Shown one piece after another: positions 49,951 to 64,000 of a DNA stretch of 64,000 nucleotides. The stretch's first letter is position 1; each line of letters starts with the position of its first letter. The position numbers and the translations under genes were made by a program. The DNA is from Setoptus koraiensis (taxonomy: Eukaryota > Animalia > Arthropoda): contig CM106585.1 of the NCBI GenBank assembly GCA_048013815.1, positions 19,964,001 to 20,028,000 on the forward strand. The letters run 5' to 3'. A model generated the notes under the pieces. It was not told the DNA's origin. It worked only from the letters and a program-made list of their open reading frames with translations, and ran no database searches.

Positions 49951-51653
49951 GCCACTCTCGCGAGGCACACAATTGATTTGAGCGCAATAGATTTAAACGC
50001 ATCAATCGCGTCAGCACGCTACTGACAAGTGAGCACAGGTGAGGCGCTCGTTGAATGATCACTCAAAGTCACTGGAGATGATCAAGTTGAACTTGAACTG
50101 TTTCAGTTCAAGTGAAAGTGGCGCGCCCAGACCGGAAGTGCGCACACGCGCGCCGTGGTCAGTTGCTCAGTTCGTTTTAGATTGGCCAATTAGGCACTGT
50201 TGTGCTGATTGCTGTTGTGACCAGATCGATTTCGAATTGACAAATTGATTTCTGTGATTTTGTATCTCTTTGCGCTCAAATGCTACGTAACAAAACTCAC
50301 CATGACGTAACAAGTGCTGGCGTGTCAGCGTCGGCTCAAATTAGCTGCCCACTTAAACGTAATGAGAGGTTGTGTGGCGTTGAATGGTCAGTTGTGAGCA
50401 ATATCAACAGTGACAAAGACGCTCGGCGCAACACAACAACTGTTGTCACTGTCAGCCTGACAGTGTCAGGCAAGCAAGCTGTCGCTGTCAATTGGCCATC
50501 TCACACCGCCAACACAATGTGAATAGTCACTATTCAACAGTCACTGTTGAACAGTGTGTGTGTGTGTGTGTCATCTTCATTTGTGTGTCATGATGCGAGG
50601 CAACATGATGATGTAATAATAACAAGATTGGTAAGTATTGGCAGACGACAGGCACATTGTGTTGCTTGCAAGGTGACAACACAGCCACCTGTCATGTTGC
50701 CAGCAACAGTGACATGATGGTCAAGAGAGTGCTAATTGTATTCACATGTTGTTTGTGTTGATCCAGTTGCAATCTCTCGCCGGCTAATGTTGCGCAATCG
50801 CTTGCCGGCTAATGTTGCGCAATCGCTCGCCAGAGCACGGTGTCGCCGTCAGCTGACCAGCTGACCGGCTGACAGTGTCAACTGGAGCCGGTTGGCCAGC
50901 ATATTAAATGGCCAACATATTAAATGGCCAACATGTTAGTTGGCAATTGTTGTTGTTGTTATTTTTTCTATTGTTGTTAGTCGCTGCTCGTTGTGTGCGA
51001 TACGGTGTCCAGTATCGGCGAGCTGTCCAGTCTGGCCAGTGTTGTTGTGGCAGCAACGCCGGCGACGACAGCCAACGACAATTGGCCGCACAAATCCTAT
51101 CATGATTGCACAACACAACATTATTAACTAGCTGGCCATTATTAGGCGAGCCAAGTTGCAGCTAAATAGCCTAGTCGTAGTGGCCACTGGATACTAATAT
51201 TATGTGACACAAGCTATTATAAAACTGCTGTGTGTCTCTTACAACTATTGCGTCATATAACCAGCTCAGATAATTAGTTGTCTCATCGACTCTCTCGCGG
51301 CGACGTCTTAAGTAGCCACCAGACATCATCTTGCTTAAGATGTCTTGAGAGCTCCGTCGATGAGACATACCCGCCAAACCCGACTCGCTTTGCCACCCGG
51401 GCTTTGTTTGCGGACCACCGCAAACGACTCTGCCCGGCCACTGGCGGCCGTAGCGGACAAAGCTCGCCATCCCATTAAATCGCCAGATTGATATATCTTT
51501 GAGACAGACAGACACACAGACTGCTCATCTATTCTTCTCACCACCACCACCAAATGACCTAACTAATCGAGCAACCGTTCATTTGTCGCCACCACTTCCG
51601 CCTCCGCTTGTCCAATGTGGCCGCTGCCGTCGCCGCCAAACACTAATTACTAG

Positions 51654-54148
51654 GTCCCTTTGGCATCTTTGTTAGGGAAATAGTGGCCATAGACGGCAAA
51701 ATAAATCACCAATTGGCAGCCAATCATCAGCATATAAAACAACAGCAACAAACTAACGATTGGAACGATGAACTCGCCTTCCTATCGGCCGCCAGCTCAA
51801 ATCCCACAAGCCAATCGGTGCTTCTCGTGGACTCGCTTGGCTGTCCCACCGACTCAAACATAATGGGGCCCCTCACTAAAATGGACCCCATTGGTCAGAC
51901 CATATTGGCCCCGTTCGATGCCTTCAAGTTTCCCACTTCCGATGTTGTTTTGTTCAAGGCGGTGGTCACAACGTGCGTCTCCGAATGTGAGCCCGTCTAC
52001 TGTGGCCTCCAATCTTCATCTACCATGTCCCCCCCATCATACCAGTATCCGCAGTCGCCCTCTCAGCACTCGTCCTCTAGCACCCTGGCGCCGCCCACCA
52101 CAACCAGTGCCACCACTCAGACTTTGTACACTTACGCAACACCCTTCGCGGGCTCCTCCTTGTCAACATTTACCAGTGCCACTAGCGGCGGTGGTGGTGC
52201 CAACACCGCCGCCGCCATTGGAACAGGCGGAACCGCTGGCAGCACCGGAAGTACTAGGCCGGCAATGTCGATGTTGCCGGGCGGGCAAGTGACATTCAAC
52301 AACAACACTGGCACTGGCAACCCGGTTGTCAAACCGGGCAATCAAAGCGGTCTGTTCGGGCCAATGACTACGCCCTCGGTACCGTTCAGCACGTTTCCGC
52401 CGCGCGGTGTTGCCGCGGTCAGTGCCACAACTACAAGCAGCAACAGCAACAACAGCATCAACTCTACCCGAATGAACCCGCCGCCGCTGCCGCAGCAGCA
52501 GCAACAGGCTACCGGGCAATATCCGGCAGTTATAAAGCCAATGCCGGGCAGCGGCAGTGGCATCAACCCGCAGTTCTTCAACTACAACCCGGCGGCCCAA
52601 TCCCAGTCAGCGGGCGTAAACAAGTTAGACTTCAATCTCGCCGACCTAGTCAATCAGATGACCTCCGCGATAGACGGCGACATGCGTCGCACCAGCAACA
52701 ACAACAAGTGGCCCCCCGCCGACCACCCTAGCGGCAACAACAGCAACAACCAAATGGACAACAATCACGAGATGGCAACACGATATTCGCAAATGGACAC
52801 ACAATTGTTCGATACCGATTCGGCGGGGCCACAGCAATTGGCCGGCGATTCGACCGGCTACCGGAACAACAGCACCAACCGTGTTGTTCCAACTAGCGCA
52901 AACATAAACGGCGACACTAGCATGGATCTGACCTATAGCGGCGACAAGTCGTACCTGTCGGGTGGTCTGCCCGTGGCGCAGCTGTATCAGCAGCAGTTGC
53001 ACGGGTCCGCCGTCAGGTCGTATGGCAAAAAGAAGCGGAAGCGCAGAAGAAAGAGACACGATCTAGAGGCCAATATCGTGGAGCCGAGCGGCGCCGTTAG
53101 CGATCCGTCGCGGACCAGATCGCAGACGCAGCACCGCAACGGTAGCGGCAACAACAACAACTTTCAGCTCAGCATGAACCTGGACGACATTAAATTTCAT
53201 CAGTTAAGGGCCAACATTGTGGACATGGATCAAATCAAGGAGATTCTGTCCAGGGGCCGGGACTACCGCACGCGACAGGCCAGACAATACAATGGGCATT
53301 CCGCGAGAACCGCCACGGCCGACAACAACAACATCAAGCAACCTGTTTATGAGATGGACGAGCTAGTGGTGCAGTCTATCCGCATTGTGGACAAGCTCCA
53401 TTTTGACACTAATGACACGGCCAACGGCCCTACTGGCCAGGCAACGGCCAGGGCCAGAAAATTGCAAGATTCGCCCACCAAGACAACCGACCCCACACAG
53501 ACGGCCACACAGATGAACAAATCAGCGGCCAAGACCAAAACAATCCTCGAGGGCTCCTCGAACCCAACTGGCGAACAGCAGCAACAAGCAACCGATGACG
53601 CTGATTCCAGCAGCAGCACCGACAGACGGTCGTCGAGTAACGGCAACGACGACGACAACAACGACGACAACGATGACGCCGGAGCCCCCATAGGCCACGT
53701 GGGCGCCACCATCAATAGAGGCACTCTCAATAATACGGGCGCACTCAGTCTCATAATAGGCACTGTATCATTTGTTTTTGTTCAGATATTCTTTGTATTA
53801 ATTTGCTTTGTCAGCTGGAACAAACACCATACAAGGACGCTGGCCAATTCGTCGAGCCTATCTCAGCACACTCAATCCATGATAAGTAGTTCACCCTCCA
53901 ATCTTGACACTATCAGTCTACAGTCACAACACCAACAAGCCAATTGTAATATTTTGAGCGACGGCAGAAAAGTGTATCAATATCAAGCCTATAATTTACC
54001 GCCAACATTGAACAGTTTATCGGACTATGCCACCACTAGATCCATTATTAGCGACAACAATTGTAACAATAACCAAAAAACTATGTCTCTCAAGTGCCTT
54101 GATAAAAAGTGTATAATGTGCTATGATATATTTACTATTAATTTGTAG
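51654..54148 (+). CDS. PAN/ZP protein exon 3: ZP-C, furin site, TM, cytoplasmic tail
   Basis: Acceptor TACTAG| at 51653 gives SPFGIFVREIVAIDG. LLVDSLGCPTD, FDAFKFPTSDVVLFKAVVTTCVSECEPVYC, SYGKKKRKRRRKR, LVVQSIRIVDK, TM SLIIGTVSFVFVQIFFVLICFVSW. Spliced CDS is 553+1785+2495=4833 nt (1610 aa). Confidence 0.9.
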
Positions 54149-57100
54149 ACAAAGAAAATGAATTAAATTATTTAATCTATTTCCACGCTTCCAAGATACT
54201 TTGCCGATTATTTCATTAGTGATGACGACTTTACATAAGAGATTGTTAATTGAATAAACGACGAGATGTACCATCGTCATATTGTTCGATGTGAGTCAAG
54301 ACAGCGGCCATAACAGCAGCACAGCAGCAGCGGCATCAGTAGGACTTTTCGGAAGGAAACTATGTTAATAGATTTAAGATAAGAATTCTATTCAATTCTT
54401 TGCAACAGGCGCGGGTTTCGCAGCGGGTTCCTTCTTTTTGTTGTTGTCTTTGGAGGCCGGGCCTGCGGTGGCTGTTGGCTTAGGGCAAGCATCAGCAGTA
54501 GCTTTAGAAGAGTCAGTTAGGCCTACTTGGCTTAGGGCGGCCGCATCCTCGTCGGGTCTGGTAATCTGGCCACGTTCTTGTATTTGGTCACCACAAGATC
54601 CGAGGCGATGGTCGTGTCTGGGTCGTCTCCTTTTTCCGACATGACTACGCTATTCTATACACACACACACACCGTTTGTGGCGATAATATTTGTGGTGAT
54701 AATATTTGTGGTGATAATATGTGTTGGGTAATATGTGCCGTGATATGTGTGGCAATATGCGTGTGATATCGTGGCGAATGATGGCCGCGAACAGTCACTT
54801 GTTACAGGCGTGCAACGATATTGTGTGTAAGTGATAGCAGCAGCGTATGCAAATGATAACGATAATATGCAAATGTCTATTAAATGATGGCCTTCGAAAA
54901 TAAATATATATTTATATACGATATCACTGATATTTATTATCAGTATGGTGGTGTGGATATTGGCATGTTGTGCACGCTTCTTTTAGTTTCTCGCTCTCTC
55001 TCTGTCTCTCACTCGCTCACACACTGTGCATGTTGCTTGCTGGCCCGTCTGTCTTCCTGTTTGTCTGCCGTTCTAATTTTAGCTGCTGCGCCAATGGCGG
55101 GGGGCGTGACAGAGGCCGCCCGGCGGCAATTTTCGAAAAAACACGGCGGCGGCAACACAATCGGCCAACTTGAGCCGCGGCGGCGCCCGCCAACATTATT
55201 CATGCCAACTCGGGAGGGGGGAGGCAGGCCAACGTATTATAAGCTGGCCTCTCCCACACGTGGGAGCGCCAACCAACAACCGCACGCAAAACAACAAAGA
55301 ATCTCCCATGAGCTGGCCCAACCCGCAGTCGGGAGCCCGCCGGAGTCGGGACTCGGGAGCGCGAACCACGCGTAAACAAAAACAAGCCACACGGAATTCC
55401 GGCACACGCATTTGCCGGCGGCCGGCCAGCCCAGTCGATATGCTCGCAGCAAACCACAAAAGCCCATATCATCAGGATTTAGAAAAACTTAAATAATTGC
55501 ATTTATTCAACTCAGCTTAGCTCGTATTGTTGTATCACTCTATTTACATCGATTAATCGCTTGTTGTTGTTGTTGTAACTACCACCGTGCTGGCTTTTAT
55601 TAATACTCTTCAATTATACTCTTTGTTCTCAGATAATCCTGCAGGGCCTCGGCTCCCAAATCCTTGCCGAAACCACTTTGCTTGAAGCCACCAAACGGAG
55701 CGGCCACGTCAGTCTTGTTGTACACGTTTATGAAACATGTGCCCGCGTCTAGACCGTCGGCAACGCGTTGCGCCTTGGATCTGTCTGATGTTATCACACC
55801 AGATGCCAGACCGTAATCGGTGCTGTTGGCTCTCTCGATAACTCCGTCGATGTCGCCATAACCAAACTTGCTCACAATCATTATTGGGCCAAACGATTCC
55901 TCTTTGGCGATAAACATGTCATCGGTGACATCCGTAAATACGGTCGGCATGAAAAAGTAACCCGCTCTGTCAGCGCGACGGCCTCCGTACACCAGCTTAG
56001 CGCCTTCCGCAACTCCCTTGTTACAAAAATCTATTAGGTGCTCCAAATGCTTCAAATGATTCTGTGGTCCGTGGTCTGTTGATCTCTTGAATGGATCATC
56101 AATTTTCATTTTGGCCACATTCTCAACAACACGTGCAATAAACTTGTCATGTACTTTGTCCTCTACAAATATTCTTCCCGCTGCAATACAATTTTCACCC
56201 TTGTTGAAAAAGACACTCGACATACCATAACGGACGGCCTTGTCTAAATCACAATCGGAAAATATTATCAATGGTGACTTTCCACCAAGTTCTAATGAGC
56301 ATCGTTTAAGATTGGACATGGCACAAGATTGCATTATTCGTTTGCCGGTTGGCGTGCTACCCGTGAAGCCCAACTTTCGAATGCCAACATGATCGCAAAG
56401 TGCCTGGCCACACTCACCGCCAGTACCTGGCACAATATTTACGACACCGGGAGGAAAGCCAGCTCTGACGGTTAGCTCAGCCCATTTCAATGCTGTCAAG
56501 GGACAAGCTTGTGCCGGCTTCAGAACAAGAGTGTTACCAGCTGCCAGACACGCGGCAGCCTTCCACGACACCATCATCAATGGATAGTTCCAAGGTGTTA
56601 TAATGGCACAAACACCGATGGGCTCCTTCTTGGTGATGGCCAAATTGCGGTTGGGTCGGGCCTGGTTGATAGGTATCACTGAACCCTCGATCTTGTCGCA
56701 CCATCCAGCGAAATACCTAAATACGTCTATCGACATTCCAATATGTGTCTTGATGGCTAATGTGTATACTGCACCACTATCTAGAGTTTCAATGGTAGCT
56801 AACTCTTGCTTGTGTTGTTCCATAAGATCGGCCAGCTTGTTAAGGAGCTTACCTCGATCACGAGCATTCATTAGTCTCCATTTGCTATCAGGACGGAAGG
56901 CTTTCTGGGCAGCTTTCACAGCTTTGTCCACGTCTTCTCGGGTGGTCAATTGGACTTTGCAAATTGTTTCTTCGGTTGTTGGGTTTACAATATCCAAGGT
57001 GTGGTTTGGTTTTGAAGAGTTGACGAAATTGTTACCAATGAATATTTGATTGGGAAACGAAACTTCCATCTTGTTTGCATGAATTACAACGGGCTTATAA

Positions 57101-57334
57101 TCTTCAGGCAGTTTGCCGCTGGAAGAGCCCTCGCCGCGCATTTTTCTCACAACCAATTCGACAAAATCCTCGAATTGGGTTGCCATGTAAACATCCTCAG
57201 TCTCTAGCTCAGCACCGTCACCCACCAGATCTTTGACTTCCTCCACTAAACGAGTCACATCCATCGAGCTCGCGCCAGTATAGAAGAAATCTGTGCTAGC
57301 TGTGACATCGCACGATAATATAGCTTGCCATATG
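54041..57334. repeat. Tandem segmental duplication, copy X1 (ZP 3' end, internally deleted PA2G4, ALDH1L 3' half)
   Basis: 54041-54555 matches 57432-57946. 54568-55600 matches 59203-60232 with indels. 55600-57334 matches 60232-61966 with 4 substitutions. Confidence 0.95.
54392..54642 (-). pseudogene. PA2G4: PA2G4 remnant with a 1256-bp internal deletion and 12-nt filler
   Basis: Reads MSEKGDDPDTTIASDLVVTKYKNVA, then out-of-frame RLPDPTRMRPP*. Filler GTCTGGTAATCT at 54556-54567 replaces 57947-59202. Confidence 0.88.
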
Positions 57335-57405
57335 TCGATGTCGCCATAACCAAACTTGCTCACAATCATTATTGGGCCAAACGATTCCTCTTTGGCGATA
57401 AACAT
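55600..57405 (-). CDS. Chimeric, N-terminally truncated ALDH1L (carrier domain + ALDH domain, no formyl-THF hydrolase domain), 601 aa
   Basis: 24 aa from the templated insert ([24 protein letters not shown]) are fused in frame to IWQAIL...GASSMDV (phosphopantetheine Ser) and a complete ALDH domain (LELGGKSP Glu, GENCIAAG Cys). Expression unknown. Confidence 0.55.
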
Positions 57406-57433
57406 GTCATCGGTGACATCCGTAAATACGGTC
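57334..57433. repeat. 100-bp templated insertion at the duplication junction
   Basis: Identical to 55846-55945 and 60478-60577 (ALDH1L 3' coding sequence). Shares G at the left junction and TC at the right junction. Confidence 0.93.
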
Positions 57434-57539
57434 CATTATTAGCGACAACAATTGTAACAATAACTAAAAAACTATGTCTCTCAAGTGCCTTGATAAAAAG
57501 TGTATAATGTGCTATGATATATTTACTATTAATTTGTAG
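57432..57539 (+). pseudogene. Orphan copy of the ZP-gene C-terminus with a nonsense change
   Basis: Copy of 54041-54148. CAA at 54074 reads TAA at 57465. Confidence 0.8.
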
Positions 57540-57782
57540 ACAAAGAAAATGAATTAAATTATTTAATCTATTTCCACGCTTCCAAGATACTTTGCCGATT
57601 ATTTCATTAGTGATGACGACTTTACATAAGAGATTGTTAATTGAATAAACGACGAGATGTACCATCGTCATATTGTTCGATGTGAGTCAAGACAGCGGCC
57701 ATAACAGCAGCACAGCAGCAGCGGCATCAGTAGGACTTTTCGGAAGGAAACTATGTTAATAGATTTAAGATAAGAATTCTAT

Positions 57783-58388
57783 TCAATTCTTTGCAACAGG
57801 CGCGGGTTTCGCAGCGGGTTCCTTCTTTTTGTTGTTGTCTTTGGAGGCCGGGCCTGCGGTGGCTGTTGGCTTAGGGCAAGCATCAGCAGTAGCTTTAGAA
57901 GAGTCAGTTAGGCCTACTTGGCTTAGGGCGGCCGCAACCTCGTCGGCGGCGTCCTTCTTGGCTTTGTTGGACTTCTTTTTCTTTTTGGCCGCGGCCGACG
58001 CGCTAGCAGAGTTACTACTTTGCAAGAGTTTCACTATTGATTGATCTTCAATCTTATGTTCTGTCTTATAAATACTTAGATCATAGTTGGGTAAACCTGT
58101 GATCTTGTGGGATCTGGTTGGCATTAAGAGTACTGTGAATTTGAATTGGGCTACGCATTCTCCTTCTTTTTCGTGAAGTACCGGGAATGGCTCAATTAGT
58201 TTGTGACTGACACACTCTTTGAGACCCATTTTTGCCTTGACCTCATCATCGAAGTATCTCAAGGTGAAAGGCATCAAACCAAATTTTCTGTCAACATCAC
58301 TATAAACAGCGCGCGAGGCCCTCATTTTCAGCTGATATATTTCGTCTGTCTTTTTGTATATTGTCGTTTTGGTGTCTAGTTCTCGGCC
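57783..58388 (-). CDS. PA2G4: Proliferation-associated 2G4 / EBP1, exon 2
   Basis: Acceptor ACGCAG| (intron 58389-58569). GRELDTKTTIYKK...MPFTLRYF...VLHEKEGECVAQFKFTVLLMP, with a Lys-rich C-terminal motif. Confidence 0.93.
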   Translation of the reverse strand, partial: GRELDTKTTIYKKTDEIYQLKMRASRAVYSDVDRKFGLMPFTLRYFDDEVKAKMGLKECVSHKLIEPFPVLHEKEGECVAQFKFTVLLMPTRSHKITGLPNYDLSIYKTEHKIEDQSIVKLLQSSNSASASAAAKKKKKSNKAKKDAADEVAAALSQVGLTDSSKATADACPKPTATAGPASKDNNKKKEPAAKPAPVAKN

Positions 58389-58569
58389 CTGCGTGTGGAA
58401 GGCGCATGAAAGAGAAATGGGTATTTGGAAGCAATGGTTACTACGTGGATCTATAGATGTGATAAACATGATAATCATAAACATGATAATCATAAACATA
58501 ATAATCATCAACATGCACACAAATAGGTGTGGATATCAGTGGGGATGTTAGCGGATGTTAAAAACTCAC

Positions 58570-59277
58570 CTTGCCCTCGCCGGTGGACACAAGCACGTCA
58601 ATTGCGTAGACCTCGTTCACTTCAAATTCGCACTTCTCGTGGCCCTTCCTTTGGGCCTCTGTAGGATTTTGAATAATGGACTTTTCGCCGTCGATTCTAA
58701 ATTGTTTTAATTGATGAGATAACATACCAGAGACAGGTTTACAATGATAAGATTCGGCCACCTTTTGTATGGCGTCCGTGACGGCCTCGTTTTCGCCGCC
58801 GGGCACCACCAGTCGCAGGGCGACGGCGGCCGCTTGATGCGCTGCATGTATAGCGTCGGCCTTTGGGCCGGTGGCCGGATTTTCTGGTGTTGCGCCAATG
58901 ATTAGGGAATGGGCCACTACGGCTATGTAACCGTCGATATGTGCACCTAAATCAATCTTAACTAAGTCGCCGTTTTGCAGTTTAATGTCCTCGTCTGATT
59001 TTAGGGGCGAATAATGACAGATACAATTGTTGACAGAGATACACGTAGGGAAGGCAATGCCGCGTCTCATTTCCTTGTCGCGCTTGAACACCTTGCTGGT
59101 CTCGTCGGCCATGATCTTGTCGCCTAGTTCGCACAATTCCAGCAGGCTTGCATCGTGGACGCACTTGTCTACGACCGCCTTGAGGGCCTGATTGACAATG
59201 TCGGCCACGTTCTTGTATTTGGTCACCACAAGATCCGAGGCGATGGTCGTGTCTGGGTCGTCTCCTTTTTCCGACAT
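58570..59277 (-). CDS. PA2G4: Proliferation-associated 2G4 / EBP1, exon 1
   Basis: DLVVTKYK, GIAFPTCISVNNCICHYSP, GDLVKIDLGAHIDG, YAIDVLVSTGEGK. Donor AAG|GTGAGT, phase 0. Total 437 aa. Confidence 0.95.
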
Positions 59278-60231
59278 GACTACGCTATTCTATACACACA
59301 CACACCGTTTGTGGCGATAATATTTGTGATAATATTTGTGGTGATAATATGTGTTGGGTAATATGTGCCGTGATATGTGTGGCAATATGCGTGTGATATC
59401 GTGGCGAATGATGGCCGCGAACAGTCACTTGTTACAGGCGTGCAACGATATTGTGTGTAAGTGATAGCAGCAGCGTATGCAAATGATAACGATAATATGC
59501 AAATGTCTATTAAATGGTGGCCTTCGAAAATAAATATATTTATATACGATATCACTGATATTTATTATCAGTATGGTGGTGTGGATATTGGCATGTTGTG
59601 CACGCTTCTTTTAGTTTCTCGCTCTCTCTCTCTCTCTCTCACTCGCTCACACACTGTGCATGTTGCTTGCTGGCCCGTCTGTCTGCCTGTTTGTCTGCCG
59701 TTCTAATTTTAGCTGCTGCGCCAATGGCGGGGGGCGTGACAGAGGCTGCCCGGCGGCAATTTTCGAAAAAACACCGCGGCGGCAACACAATCGGCCAACT
59801 TGAGCGGCGGCCGCCAACATTATTCATGCAAACTCGGGAGGGAGAGGCAGAGCAGCGTATTATATATAAGATGGCCTCTCCCACGTGGGAGCGCCAAAAA
59901 GACGCCGCACGCAAAACAACAAAGAATCTCCCATGAGCTGGCCCAACCCGATGTCGTGTCCGTAGTCGGGAGCCCGCCGGAGTCGGGACTCGGGAGCGCG
60001 AACCACGCGTAAACAAAAACAAGCCACACGGAATTCCGGCACACGCATTTGCCGGCGGCCGGCCAGCCCAGTCGATGCTCGCAGCAAACCACAAAAGCCC
60101 ATATCATCAGGATTTAGAAAAACTTAAATAATTGCATTTATTCAACTCAGCTTAGCTCAATTTGTTGTATCACTCTATTTACATCGATTAATCGCTTGTT
60201 GTTTTCGTAACTACCACCGTGCTGGCTTTTA

Positions 60232-63012
60232 TTAATACTCTTCAATTATACTCTTTGTTCTCAGATAATCCTGCAGGGCCTCGGCTCCCAAATCCTTGCC
60301 GAAACCACTTTGCTTGAAGCCACCAAACGGAGCGGCCACGTCAGTCTTGTTGTACACGTTTATGAAACATGTGCCCGCGTCTAGACCATCGGCAACGCGT
60401 TGCGCCTTGGATCTGTCTGATGTTATAACACCAGATGCCAGACCGTAATCGGTGCTGTTGGCTCTCTCGATAACTCCGTCGATGTCGCCATAACCAAACT
60501 TGCTCACAATCATTATTGGGCCAAACGATTCCTCTTTGGCGATAAACATGTCATCGGTGACATCCGTAAATACGGTCGGCATGAAAAAGTAACCCGCTCT
60601 GTCGGCGCGACGGCCTCCGTACACCAGCTTAGCGCCTTCCGCAACTCCCTTGTTACAAAAATCTATTAGGTGCTCCAAATGCTTCAAATGATTCTGTGGT
60701 CCGTGGTCTGTTGATCTCTTGAATGGATCATCAATTTTCATTTTGGCCACATTCTCAACAACACGTGCAATAAACTTGTCATGTACTTTGTCCTCTACAA
60801 ATATTCTTCCCGCTGCAATACAATTTTCACCCTTGTTGAAAAAGACACTCGACATACCATAACGGACGGCCTTGTCTAAATCACAATCGGAAAATATTAT
60901 CAATGGTGACTTTCCACCAAGTTCTAATGAGCATCGTTTAAGATTGGACATGGCACAAGATTGCATTATTCGTTTGCCGGTTGGCGTGCTACCCGTGAAG
61001 CCCAACTTTCGAATGCCAACATGATCGCAAAGTGCCTGGCCACACTCACCGCCAGTACCTGGCACAATATTTACGACACCGGGAGGAAAGCCAGCTCTGA
61101 CGGTTAGCTCAGCCCATTTCAATGCTGTCAAGGGACAAGCTTGTGCCGGCTTCAGAACAAGAGTGTTACCAGCTGCCAGACACGCGGCAGCCTTCCACGA
61201 CACCATCATCAATGGATAGTTCCAAGGTGTTATAATGGCACAAACACCGATGGGCTCCTTCTTGGTGATGGCCAAATTGCGGTTGGGTCGGGCCTGGTTG
61301 ATAGGTATCACTGAACCCTCGATCTTGTCGCACCATCCAGCGAAATACCTAAATACGTCTATCGACATTCCAATATGTGTCTTGATGGCTAATGTGTATA
61401 CTGCACCACTATCTAGAGTTTCAATGGTAGCTAACTCTTGCTTGTGTTGTTCCATAAGATCGGCCAGCTTGTTAAGGAGCTTACCTCGATCACGAGCATT
61501 CATTAGTCTCCATTTGCTATCAGGACGGAAGGCTTTCTGGGCAGCTTTCACAGCTTTGTCCACGTCTTCTCGGGTGGTCAATTGGACTTTGCAAATTGTT
61601 TCTTCGGTTGTTGGGTTTACAATATCCAAGGTGTGGTTTGGTTTTGAAGAGTTGACGAAATTGTTACCAATGAATATTTGATTGGGAAACGAAACTTCCA
61701 TCTTGTTTGCATGAATTACAACGGGCTTATAATCTTCAGGTAGTTTGCCGCTGGAAGAGCCCTCGCCGCGCATTTTTCTCACAACCAATTCGACAAAATC
61801 CTCGAATTGGGTTGCCATGTAAACATCCTCAGTCTCTAGCTCAGCACCGTCACCCACCAGATCTTTGACTTCCTCCACTAAACGAGTCACATCCATCGAG
61901 CTCGCGCCAGTATAGAAGAAATCTGTGCTAGCTGTGACATCGCACGATAATATAGCTTGCCATATGGTCTTGATGGAAGCTTGAAGTCTTGTCTCATCCT
62001 CGTTGAGAACTAACGGTGGCCTGTTTGCTTCTGGGCTGCCATATGACGATGCTAGAATCATTTTTCCTGTTGCTGCAAATTGAACTTTGGATACATTAAC
62101 TGGCCTATTGTCACCATTGGCAAACAACAACAGACCATCCTCGTGCACAATACCTTGCCTCGACATACCCTCGACATCTACCAATCTAACAGCTTCTGGT
62201 AGTCCGTTTTCAACACGATAAACGGAAGAACCAAAAAGACGAACCTTCTCCGGCTGTCCACCTGGTAGTGATAGGTTGATCCACGCTCCGGGAACTTTGT
62301 CCATACCTCTGATGAAATTGTGCACTACTTGAGCAGAGGAATTATCAAATTTCAGCTGACATAACTCATCCTTGTTTCTGAGAATGCCCTCGTACGTGGC
62401 AAGAGCCTCTGATTGAGGTATACGCGGTGCTTGGTTTGTGTTGATCAAGCCAACAGCTTCCACAAGTCCATCAATACCGGCTGGATATAGAAATCTAGTA
62501 TATAGAGTTTCAACCGTATCGTTGACCTCGATGTAGCACGATTTCTTGAGCAAAATCGGTCCTGTGTCAAGTCCATCGTCCGTCCAGAAGATTGTAAATC
62601 CAGCCTCCTCGTCACCCATGATAAGAGTCCAGTTAATAGAGGCACCACCACGATGTCTTGGCAACAGAGACGGGTGATAGTTGATTGATTTGAATTCTGG
62701 AGCTTCAATCACTTCAGTTGGAATGAATTGATTGCAATAGGGCAAAACGTTCAAATTGGCTCCGACGGATTTGTATTGCTCGACAACTTCGGGTATTGCC
62801 TGTTTCTTTAGTTGCCATCTCTTGAATTTGAACACTTTCAGATTGAATTCCTTGGCTGTTGTTGCCAATATATCCTCGCGACCTGTTCTTTCATCATCCG
62901 GAATGGTAAACACACCGGCTATTGTATAACCTTCATTGATGAGCTTTCGCAGAAATTCTGCCGAAAACGCCGACTGGCCTATTACGGCTATACGTAGTGA
63001 GCTAGTGACCAT
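60232..63012 (-). CDS. ALDH1L1: 10-formyltetrahydrofolate dehydrogenase (ALDH1L), intronless, no evident mitochondrial leader
   Basis: 926 aa. RIAVIGQS, HPSLLPRHRG, DDGLDTG (hydrolase domain), GASSMDV (carrier domain), [30 protein letters not shown]. Confidence 0.96.
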   Translation of the reverse strand: MVTSSLRIAVIGQSAFSAEFLRKLINEGYTIAGVFTIPDDERTGREDILATTAKEFNLKVFKFKRWQLKKQAIPEVVEQYKSVGANLNVLPYCNQFIPTEVIEAPEFKSINYHPSLLPRHRGGASINWTLIMGDEEAGFTIFWTDDGLDTGPILLKKSCYIEVNDTVETLYTRFLYPAGIDGLVEAVGLINTNQAPRIPQSEALATYEGILRNKDELCQLKFDNSSAQVVHNFIRGMDKVPGAWINLSLPGGQPEKVRLFGSSVYRVENGLPEAVRLVDVEGMSRQGIVHEDGLLLFANGDNRPVNVSKVQFAATGKMILASSYGSPEANRPPLVLNEDETRLQASIKTIWQAILSCDVTASTDFFYTGASSMDVTRLVEEVKDLVGDGAELETEDVYMATQFEDFVELVVRKMRGEGSSSGKLPEDYKPVVIHANKMEVSFPNQIFIGNNFVNSSKPNHTLDIVNPTTEETICKVQLTTREDVDKAVKAAQKAFRPDSKWRLMNARDRGKLLNKLADLMEQHKQELATIETLDSGAVYTLAIKTHIGMSIDVFRYFAGWCDKIEGSVIPINQARPNRNLAITKKEPIGVCAIITPWNYPLMMVSWKAAACLAAGNTLVLKPAQACPLTALKWAELTVRAGFPPGVVNIVPGTGGECGQALCDHVGIRKLGFTGSTPTGKRIMQSCAMSNLKRCSLELGGKSPLIIFSDCDLDKAVRYGMSSVFFNKGENCIAAGRIFVEDKVHDKFIARVVENVAKMKIDDPFKRSTDHGPQNHLKHLEHLIDFCNKGVAEGAKLVYGGRRADRAGYFFMPTVFTDVTDDMFIAKEESFGPIMIVSKFGYGDIDGVIERANSTDYGLASGVITSDRSKAQRVADGLDAGTCFINVYNKTDVAAPFGGFKQSGFGKDLGAEALQDYLRTKSIIEEY

Positions 63013-63289
63013 TGTTGATGCTCGTAGAACACTGCTGAAATTTAATCAAAATTGTTAAGCTGATGATATTATTTGTTGAAATGACATATAATTTGAAAAA
63101 GAAATAAATTTTGAATCATTCGCTGACCTTGAACTGAGATTCCTGAGTTGTTGACGTAATCACGCTGAATGAAACACTGGAACTTGGAACATCCATGTAG
63201 CGACACGCACATGTTTATATATGTGACTCGAATGTGGTAAGATCATTACGAAGTGTAGGCGTACATGCTAGTTAGCTATGGTAAGTTAG

Positions 63290-63765
63290 ATATTGATCGT
63301 AATCAGATTGCATCCCTCTTCAAGTAGTAACAGACAGACTTGGTTTGCAGACGGCTCACTTTTACTATGTTAGAGTTGCTCAAAGTTGAACGCAGCAAAA
63401 TAATGCTATGGATGGTATCGATATTGTCGAGCTTATTTGCCAGTCCGTATGATTTGTAAATTGGACAAGGTGTCTTTATCGTAATCAGATTGCATCTCGT
63501 TGAGTGGTGGAGGCCGAACTTGAGTGCGGGCGGCACATTTTATTCTATTAATGTTGTGGATGGTGCCAATGTTGTCGAGCTTATTTGCCAGTTTGTATGA
63601 TAGCTTGTGTGGATCGAGCAAGGTGTCTCTGTAGTTATCATGTTGCATCTAGTCAAGTATAGCAGAGGCCGAACTTGATTGGAGGCGTCTAAATCAATCT
63701 GTGCAAGTCAAAACTGCATAATGCTTCAGGATGGTAACCATATTGTCGAGCTTATTTGCCAGTCC
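63290..63765. repeat. Degenerate ~150-170 bp tandem repeat (about 3 copies)
   Basis: Shared core TGTCGAGCTTATTTGCCAGT at 63425, 63573 and 63744. Shared ATCAGATTGCATC, CAAGGTGTCT and GAGGCCGAACTTGA blocks. Confidence 0.8.
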
Positions 63766-64000
63766 TAACAAAGTTGTTGTATAATGGCACTACATAAGAC
63801 GGAGATTGCATAGCTATTATATCAATCTCTTTGTTGTTTATTTTATTTGTTAAGATACTATGATAACTTGGTGTAAATTGTAGATGCTTACACTCAGGAA
63901 ATTGCATCAATATCACTAGATAGCCTATCTGACAACATAACAACGTCTATTACACAATAGATAAGTGGTAAAATAAGGTGCCTGCGGACACACGTACAAG

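What the first reader, a model, noticed from the sequence alone, without database searches (positions are those of the whole stretch)
55600..57405. Junction-born chimeric gene: a templated insert donates an in-frame ATG and creates a hydrolase-less carrier+ALDH enzyme
Seen: the duplication truncates ALDH1L inside the first helix of its carrier (ACP-like) domain. The 100-bp insert, copied from the 3' end of ALDH1L itself, lands in frame and supplies [24 protein letters not shown]. An in-frame TAA lies upstream, so this ATG is the first one. The 601-aa ORF keeps the phosphopantetheine Ser (GASSMDV) and catalytic Glu/Cys but lacks the formyl-THF hydrolase. Established: the isolated C-terminal domain of mammalian ALDH1L1 tetramerises and oxidises aldehydes with NADP+. 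Inference: this could be a newborn stand-alone aldehyde dehydrogenase, or a subunit that co-assembles with and modulates the full-length enzyme. It could be transcribed by read-through from PA2G4, which lies directly upstream on the same strand.
Basis: partly seen in the sequence, partly recalled or inferred. Interest (0 to 1): 0.85.

Follow-up and report, generated by a model that had tools for sequence, protein, structure and literature searches.

The report
Young truncated ALDH1L duplicate, apparently untranscribed
A recent 4.5-kb tandem duplication in this probable mite genome left a truncated second copy of the folate enzyme ALDH1L with an intact 601-codon reading frame; the DNA structure is real, but RNA assemblies show no transcript across its start, so it looks like a newborn, probably silent duplicate.

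Summary
ORF 55600-57405 (-) is 601 aa. Residues 25-601 equal parent ALDH1L residues 350-926 (gene 60232-63012). Residues 1-24 come from a perfect 100-bp copy (57334-57433) of ALDH1L's own 3' region.

It is not an assembly artefact. DNA contigs from two other samples and studies carry both junctions, in one run at single-copy depth.

The functional reading is not supported.
- RNA contigs with a spliced PA2G4 show PA2G4 coverage ending at 57511, with nothing over 57434-57510.
- Those contigs carry no junction words, although they carry another junction specific to this duplication. Two further runs of that study, taken to be RNA, also lack them.
- The ALDH1L contig is of the parental type.
- Three out-of-frame upstream ATGs and a 100-codon upstream ORF precede or overlap the start. 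Read-through from PA2G4 would therefore not translate it.
- The break removes about two thirds or more of carrier helix I.
- An in-frame join had about a one-in-three chance.
- Four synonymous and no replacement differences is only weak evidence of constraint (p about 0.02-0.07), and it has other explanations.

Verdict: a real, young partial duplicate, probably silent. Raw reads could still show rare transcripts. The scan noted this duplication twice more on this same stretch.

The parts
55600..57405 (-). 601-aa chimeric ORF: 24 new N-terminal residues, then the truncated carrier domain and the complete ALDH domain
   Evidence: residues 25-601 are identical in protein to parent residues 350-926
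57334..57433 (-). 100-bp templated insert at the duplication junction; supplies the ATG (57405-57403) and 24 codons
   Evidence: 100/100 identity to 55846-55945 and 60478-60577; microhomology G at 57334 and TC at 57432-57433
55846..55945 (-). native copy of the 100-mer inside the truncated ALDH copy (possible template)
60478..60577 (-). native copy of the 100-mer inside the parent ALDH1L (possible template)
54568..57334 (-). segment B, copy 1: first 25 codons and promoter region of PA2G4, the intergenic stretch, and the 3' 1735 bp of ALDH1L
   Evidence: 4 differences in the CDS, about 20 mismatches and 13 indels in the non-coding part
59203..61966 (-). segment B, copy 2 (parental context)
54041..54555 (.). 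segment A, copy 1 (3' end of the 821-aa gene on +, 3' end and 3'UTR of PA2G4 on -)
   Evidence: 2 mismatches against copy 2
57432..57946 (.). segment A, copy 2; lies directly upstream of the chimeric ORF
54556..54567 (.). 12-nt filler (GTCTGGTAATCT) at the scar of a 1256-bp deletion that removed the PA2G4 body from copy 1
   Evidence: no template for it in the window; the junction is present in X2, X3 and X5
60232..63012 (-). parent, full-length intronless ALDH1L (926 aa: hydrolase, carrier, ALDH)
   Evidence: an RNA contig of X5 spans it
57783..59277 (-). intact PA2G4 gene, with one 181-nt intron at 58388-58568
   Evidence: the spliced contig in X5 skips 58388-58568 with GT..AG ends on the minus strand
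57505..57530 (-). PA2G4 poly(A) signal-like AGTAAA (57527-57522); RNA coverage ends at 57511
   Evidence: X5 contig 57511-57936 and zero coverage over 57434-57510; sequence
57369..57671 (-). 100-codon upstream ORF in another frame that overlaps the chimeric start; further upstream ATGs at 57436, 57419 and 57410

Best explanation
This is a real, young, complex tandem duplication. The unit 57432-61966 (4.5 kb) was copied head to tail, probably by template switching during replication or by polymerase-theta-type end joining. The junction carries 1-2 nt of microhomology and a 100-bp insert templated from about 1.4 kb away. A later 1256-bp deletion removed the PA2G4 body from the new copy.

One breakpoint fell in the carrier domain of ALDH1L. 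The insert happened to be in frame, so a 601-codon ORF exists. The ORF is intact because the duplicate is young (0.2-0.4% divergence), not because it is shown to be used.

It has no promoter of its own that can be recognised. The upstream PA2G4 mRNA ends 106 nt before its ATG. No junction-spanning RNA is assembled.

Shown here: the DNA structure, its presence in independent samples, and the absence of junction RNA from contigs. Inferred: the mutational mechanism, the silence or near-silence of the copy, and its likely fate as a pseudogene.
For: Structure.

Independent DNA: X2 and X3 hold both junctions, in X2 at single-copy depth (147 and 142 against 153), with two-copy segments at 280-317 and the three-copy 100-mer at 462. 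Six DNA runs from four studies hold 11 of 13 junction words.

RNA: X5 has a spliced PA2G4, so it is RNA. Its ALDH1L contig carries the parental T at 57109 and runs on into parental upstream sequence. Coverage of segment A ends at 57511, and there is no contig over 57434-57510 or across either junction. The same run does hold the junction of the copy-1 deletion, so these animals appear to carry the duplication. X5, X7 and X9 each hold only 7 of 13 junction words.

Translation context: there are nine upstream ATGs between the PA2G4 stop and 57405. Four of them open ORFs that run across the start codon: two (57671 and 57665) open the 100-codon upstream ORF, and two (57419 and 57410) lie just upstream.

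Carrier domain: the break is at rat-equivalent residue 332, while helix I ends around residue 334-337. AlphaFold confidence for the carrier is 59-72 in the chimera against 73-89 in a parent construct with the same alignment depth.
Against: All four differences between the two coding copies are synonymous and there is no indel in 1.7 kb. The adjacent non-coding kilobase has about 20 mismatches and 13 indels. If copy 1 were neutral, P(4 of 4 synonymous) is about 0.016.

Contigs drop rare variants, so low-level junction transcripts are not excluded.

Only one RNA data set (one study, whole animals on a host) could be examined. The raw-read RNA run X20 contained no reads of this organism at all.

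Stage-, tissue- or sex-limited expression was not tested.
Confidence: 0.7

Rival explanations
1. One reading: a functioning newborn gene. The 601-aa protein is made and acts as a stand-alone NADP-dependent aldehyde dehydrogenase. Alternatively it co-assembles through its ALDH domain with full-length ALDH1L and changes formyl-THF dehydrogenase output.
For: The ORF is intact and the complete ALDH domain is identical to the parent, including Glu673 and Cys707 equivalents. There are 4 synonymous and 0 replacement differences. The isolated Ct domain of rat ALDH1L1 is a tetramer and is active on short-chain aldehydes in vitro. Catalysis in the full enzyme runs between protomers, so mixed tetramers would matter (PMC8748788). 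In X2 the junction is at single-copy depth, so the duplication is at or near fixation in that sample.
Against: No junction RNA in the contigs of X5 or in the word index for X5, X7 and X9. PA2G4 RNA ends before the junction. Upstream ATGs and an upstream ORF overlap the start. Carrier helix I is lost and the new N-terminus is predicted disordered, with pLDDT below 40. The synonymous-only pattern can also come from parental allelic variation captured at birth or from gene conversion. With segment A as the neutral yardstick (2 of 515), the chance of seeing no replacement change is about 0.07.
Confidence: 0.1
2. Copy 1 is transcribed from a cryptic start inside its own body, downstream of the junction. 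Translation would then begin at an internal Met, for example M113 (MEVSFPNQ...), giving a plain ALDH-domain protein without the junction peptide. Or the RNA is non-coding.
For: Such RNA would not contain junction words, so searches do not exclude it. The PA2G4 remnant 1 kb downstream in copy 1 is clearly transcribed, so the region is transcriptionally active. M113 lies at the start of the region that matches crystallised Ct-domain constructs.
Against: The X5 ALDH1L contig shows the parental letter at 57109 and no copy-1 variant is reported. There is no positive evidence for any internal start.
Confidence: 0.08
3. An assembly artefact: a false duplication from collapsed or duplicated haplotypes, or a chimeric read.
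For: The two coding copies are nearly identical. The best DNA holder is probably the sample the assembly came from.
Against: Both junctions, and the copy-1 deletion junction, occur in contigs of runs from other samples and studies (X2, X3). In X2 the depths follow the 1:2:3 copy numbers that the structure predicts. X4 also holds the junction words.
Confidence: 0.02

Closest known systems
Chimeric and partial genes made by young tandem duplications in Drosophila populations (Rogers et al., PMC4069613 and PMC5460883)
   Same: A kilobase-scale tandem duplication whose breakpoint lies inside a gene creates a truncated or chimeric ORF next to the parent. The copy is young, nearly identical and specific to a species or population.
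   Different: In those studies a share of such structures was shown by RNA-seq to be expressed. Here the available RNA contigs show no junction transcript. The start codon here is donated by a templated insert from the same gene, not by a second gene or by recruited non-coding DNA.
Tandem duplications with microhomology and templated insertions from polymerase-theta end joining or replication template switching (PMC7368036, PMC8654963)
   Same: Head-to-tail duplication, 1-2 nt of junction microhomology, and an insert identical to nearby sequence in the same orientation.
   Different: The insert is 100 bp and its template lies about 1.4 kb from the breakpoint. By my own recollection, not checked here, that is longer and farther than typical theta-mediated inserts, which fits a replicative template switch at least as well. 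The mechanism was not tested.
Isolated C-terminal (ALDH) domain of ALDH1L1 (Ct-FDH), e.g. PDB 2o2p and 7yjj
   Same: The ALDH domain is complete with all catalytic residues. It matches these chains over residues 108-601 at E about 1e-228.
   Different: Those are laboratory constructs starting at the ALDH domain. This ORF carries, in addition, a carrier domain without helix I and 24 residues copied from the ALDH core. No protein product has been shown.
Full-length ALDH1L1/ALDH1L2 (10-formyltetrahydrofolate dehydrogenase)
   Same: Derived from it. Residues 25-601 are identical to the parent's carrier and ALDH parts.
   Different: It lacks the formyl-THF hydrolase domain (no PF00551 or PF02911), so it cannot by itself carry out the defining reaction.

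Membership tests
10-formyltetrahydrofolate dehydrogenase (ALDH1L) | N-terminal formyl-THF hydrolase domain (Formyl_trans_N and Formyl_trans_C) | tested here: not met
   Pfam scan: the 601-aa ORF has only PF00171, while the parent has PF00551, PF02911 and PF00171.
10-formyltetrahydrofolate dehydrogenase (ALDH1L) | Intact carrier (Int) domain: helices I, II and IV, with the phosphopantetheine Ser at the start of helix II | tested here: not met
   The Ser is present (S47 = rat Ser354). However, the parental sequence starts at rat-equivalent residue 332, so only 3-6 residues of an approximately 18-residue helix I remain. Carrier pLDDT is 59-72 against 73-89 in the parent construct. Folding and modification in vivo are not testable here.
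10-formyltetrahydrofolate dehydrogenase (ALDH1L) | C-terminal ALDH domain with the catalytic Cys and Glu | tested here: met
   PF00171 at E = 5e-172 over residues 130-597. E372 = Glu673 and C406 = Cys707.
Aldehyde dehydrogenase superfamily (PF00171) | Full-length match to the family profile above the curated cut-off | tested here: met
   573 bits against a cut-off of 23, profile positions 4-461 of 461.
Expressed new chimeric gene from a tandem duplication | Duplication junction present in genomic DNA of independent samples | tested here: met
   X2 and X3 contigs bridge 57334/57335 and 57433/57434. Six DNA runs hold 11 of 13 junction words.
Expressed new chimeric gene from a tandem duplication | Transcript spanning the junction | tested here: not met
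   No junction contig in X5, which is RNA. X5, X7 and X9 hold 7 of 13 words, as expected from the native 100-mer alone. These are contigs only; raw reads of this organism could not be examined because X20 held none.
Expressed new chimeric gene from a tandem duplication | Signature of purifying or positive selection on the new copy | tested here: inconclusive
   4 synonymous and 0 replacement differences. P is about 0.016 if copy 1 is neutral and 0.07 with segment A as the yardstick. The pattern is confounded by captured allelic variation and gene conversion.
Templated-insertion junction (theta-mediated end joining or template switching) | Short microhomology at both joins and an insert identical to nearby sequence | tested here: met
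   1 nt and 2 nt shared at the joins. The insert matches 100 of 100 bases of sequence about 1.4 kb away on the same strand.

The most novel reading that the evidence does not exclude
The truncated copy is expressed at a low level or in a restricted stage or tissue that the available RNA missed. Its product enters ALDH1L tetramers through the unchanged ALDH domain. Formyl transfer runs between protomers, so hydrolase-less subunits with a crippled carrier would lower formyl-THF dehydrogenase output: a naturally arisen dominant modulator of folate one-carbon flux, kept by selection (hence only synonymous differences).
Probability: 0.06. Interest if true: 0.6.

Novelty: new member of a known kind. 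Interest (0 to 1): 0.27.

Why it matters
If the ORF were expressed, it would be a dated, mechanistically transparent birth of a gene. The start codon comes from a repair-templated insert, and the product could either free the ALDH activity of a three-domain folate enzyme or interfere with the parent tetramer.

As the evidence stands, it is a well-resolved example of something common: a young partial duplicate with a clear junction signature and an ORF that is open by chance and by youth. Its practical value lies elsewhere. It is a clean structural-variant marker for this species, it is a caution for gene predictors that would call it a 601-aa ALDH, and it is a case where a few raw RNA reads would settle the question.

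Tried and rejected
- Raw RNA reads. The one raw-read RNA run laid (X20, labelled organism C) gave 0 reads on 2.7 kb that includes the housekeeping gene PA2G4. It therefore does not contain this organism, and the label is probably a host.
- Exact look-up of the 601-aa and 926-aa proteins in the 15-billion collection. Neither is present.
- Homology search on residues 1-110. No protein covers the junction. The best hits are 70% identical full-length ALDH1Ls, so the species is not in that collection.
- JGI metagenome scans for the chimeric junction and, as a control, for the parental sequence. Both were empty, so again no test.
- Synteny in relatives (L001-L004). Each has one intronless full-length ALDH1L with different neighbours, so they cannot show the ancestral arrangement.
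- Rfam scan of 50000-64000. Nothing found.
- The end of the X5 ALDH1L contig. It falls exactly one base before the first 3' difference between the copies (55575), and I considered this a sign that both 3' ends are in the RNA. I set it aside because AATAAA overlaps the stop codon and that position is also the expected poly(A) site, 23 nt downstream.
- AlphaFold comparison. The lower carrier confidence is only supportive. The models are mediocre overall (mean pLDDT 70 and 72) because the alignments are shallow.
- X3 depths are low and do not follow copy number. I use X3 for presence only.
Full report
**1. What is in the sequence**

The minus strand carries a 926-aa intronless ALDH1L gene at 60232-63012, with Formyl_trans_N, Formyl_trans_C and Aldedh domains. 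Downstream lies PA2G4 at 57783-59277 (Peptidase_M24). Further downstream is a 601-aa ORF at 55600-57405 that has only the Aldedh domain.

Self-comparison shows two repeated segments:
- Segment A: 54041-54555 = 57432-57946, 2 mismatches.
- Segment B: 54568-57334 = 59203-61966.

The unit 57432-61966 was therefore duplicated head to tail. The new copy later lost 1256 bp, equivalent to 57947-59202 (the PA2G4 body). That loss left a 12-nt filler at 54556-54567.

At the duplication junction sits a 100-bp stretch, 57334-57433. It is 100% identical to 55846-55945 and to 60478-60577, which is ALDH1L's own 3' region on the same strand. One base (G) and two bases (TC) are shared at the joins.

The insert is in frame. 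It gives residues 1-24, [24 protein letters not shown], and in-frame TAATAA lies just upstream.

**2. Is the junction real?**

Yes. In DNA run X2 (another organism label, sample and study), 59- and 58-bp unitigs bridge 57334/57335 and 57433/57434. One search gives these depths for X2:

| Segment | Expected copies | Depth |
|---|---|---|
| Junction unitig 57305-57363 | 1 | 147 |
| Junction unitig 57404-57461 | 1 | 142 |
| PA2G4 body | 1 | 153 |
| ALDH part of segment B | 2 | 280 |
| Segment A | 2 | 317 |
| The 100-mer | 3 | 462 |

X3 has the same organism label as the source but comes from another sample and study. It also holds both junctions. Six DNA runs from four studies hold 11 of 13 sampled words of 57308-57460. 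An assembly artefact is excluded for practical purposes. In X2 the duplication is at or near fixation.

**3. Is it transcribed?**

Run X5 turned out to be RNA. Its PA2G4 contig skips 58388-58568 with GT..AG ends on the minus strand. This also corrects the intron position.

X5 carries the junction of the copy-1 deletion, with an exact match to 54556-54585. The animals in that sample therefore appear to have the duplication.

In X5:
- The ALDH1L contig carries the parental T at 57109 and continues past 57334 into parental upstream sequence.
- Coverage of segment A stops at 57511, 11 nt after an AGTAAA. This is not a fork between the copies, because the next difference between them is at 57465.
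- The bin depths leave exactly zero contig coverage over 57434-57510.
- No contig crosses either junction.

X5, X7 and X9 each hold 7 of 13 junction-stretch words. That is what the native 100-mer alone would provide.

So PA2G4 mRNA ends 106 nt before the proposed ATG, and no junction-spanning RNA is assembled, while parental ALDH1L and PA2G4 stand at about 20-fold word depth.

The limits of this test are clear. Contigs drop rare variants. Only one study was available. The raw-read run X20 held no reads of this organism at all. Rare or restricted transcripts remain possible.

**4. Could it be translated?**

Nine ATGs lie between the PA2G4 stop and 57405:
- 57671 and 57665 open a 100-codon ORF that ends at 57369, across the start codon.
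- 57419 and 57410 open short ORFs that also run across it.
- 57436 has a good context and its ORF ends at 57407.

A read-through RNA would in addition carry the whole 394-codon PA2G4 ORF first. Only a 5' end within about 13 nt of the ATG would give the 601-aa protein by ordinary scanning. The read-through idea fails on translation as well as on the RNA data.

**5. What would the protein be?**

Residues 25-601 are identical to the parent. Alignment to rat ALDH1L1 (7rlu) gives S47 = Ser354, E372 = Glu673 and C406 = Cys707. The ALDH domain would therefore be competent. The isolated rat Ct domain is tetrameric and oxidises short-chain aldehydes in vitro (PMC8748788).

The carrier domain is another matter.
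- It is a bundle of three major helices (I, II and IV), spans rat residues 314-397, and has a 19-residue linker before Ser354.
- The parental sequence in the chimera begins at rat-equivalent residue 332.
- In the model of the parent construct, helix I is 18 residues long, and only its last 6 survive.
- With the same alignment depth, AlphaFold confidence for the carrier is 59-72 in the chimera against 73-89 in the parent.
- The 24 new residues are natively a buried strand region of the ALDH core. Here they are predicted disordered, with pLDDT of 27-39.

A working carrier is unlikely. It would also have no hydrolase to serve in cis.

**6. Selection**

The two coding copies differ at 4 sites, all synonymous. 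Segment A differs at 2 of 515 sites. The non-coding part of B has about 20 mismatches and 13 indels. Fourteen of these events cluster in 55174-55330.

If copy 1 were neutral and the parent constrained, P(4 of 4 synonymous) is about 0.016. Using segment A as the neutral yardstick, the chance of no replacement change is about 0.07.

The pattern is suggestive but has two ordinary explanations. The differences may be parental allelic variants captured when the duplication formed, or exchanged with the parent later. Or gene conversion may keep the long identical coding stretch homogeneous.

The in-frame join itself had about a one-in-three prior, because the insert is read in its native frame.

**7. 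Origin and organism**

The junction anatomy matches template switching or theta-mediated end joining (PMC7368036). At 100 bp, and with a template about 1.4 kb away, a replicative switch fits at least as well.

The closest named ALDH1L is from the eriophyoid mite Aceria tosichella, at 58% identity over the carrier region. All near relatives are intronless genes on metagenome or Logan contigs. A mite is therefore my inference.

**8. Verdict**

This is a real, young partial duplicate with an accidental open frame. There is no evidence of expression, and several features count against the proposed route to a protein. It is a new member of a well-known kind (PMC4069613; PMC5460883). The same duplication was noted twice more by the scan on this same stretch (s1-318750, s1-318811). 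I re-derived both observations independently.

Noticed in passing
window 54041-54642 (-): The PA2G4 remnant in copy 1 consists of the first 25 codons, a 12-nt filler and then an out-of-frame tail, giving a 36-aa ORF. It is transcribed. Its copy-specific 82-bp unitig has word depth 145 in RNA run X5, against 20 for the intact PA2G4 body. In DNA run X2 the same unitig is at single-copy depth (168 against 153). A dead gene fragment therefore appears to out-express its parent about sevenfold.
   Followed up: partly
window 55174-55330 vs 59803-59965: A hypervariable patch lies in the duplicated ALDH1L-PA2G4 intergenic region. It holds 14 substitutions or indels (including 4-, 6- and 12-nt indels) in about 150 nt, while the flanking duplicated DNA differs by 0.2-0.4%. 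There is no Rfam hit, no conserved ORF and no other copy in the window.
   Followed up: partly
window 58388-58568 (-): The single PA2G4 intron is 181 nt with GT..AG ends, as shown by a spliced RNA contig. The ORF-based guess of a 37-nt gap at 58521-58557 was wrong. The spliced CDS is 394 codons.
   Followed up: yes
window 55598-55603 and 60230-60235 (-): In both ALDH1L copies a canonical AATAAA overlaps the TAA stop codon. The RNA contig ends 23 nt further on. This implies a 3'UTR of only about 25 nt, in keeping with a very compact genome.
   Followed up: partly
window 51683-54148 (+) and 57432-57539: An 821-aa protein rich in Gln, Asn, Ser and Thr, with a C-terminal hydrophobic segment and no Pfam match. 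It converges on PA2G4. Its last 108 bp were duplicated as part of segment A and now lie antisense just upstream of the chimeric ORF. No RNA contig of X5 covers that part.
   Followed up: no
runs X5, X7, X9 vs X20-X29 (organism C): RNA of this animal is found in runs labelled with another organism. Other RNA runs with that label contain none of it: X20 gave 0 reads out of 11 million. The label is probably a host, so RNA evidence for this species has to be sought in infested-host data sets.
   Followed up: partly
window 57465 and 57937: The two differences between the copies of segment A. DNA contigs of X2 and X3 show C at 57465, where the window has T in copy 2. That T may be private to the assembled strain, or the assembler may have merged the two variants.
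   Followed up: no
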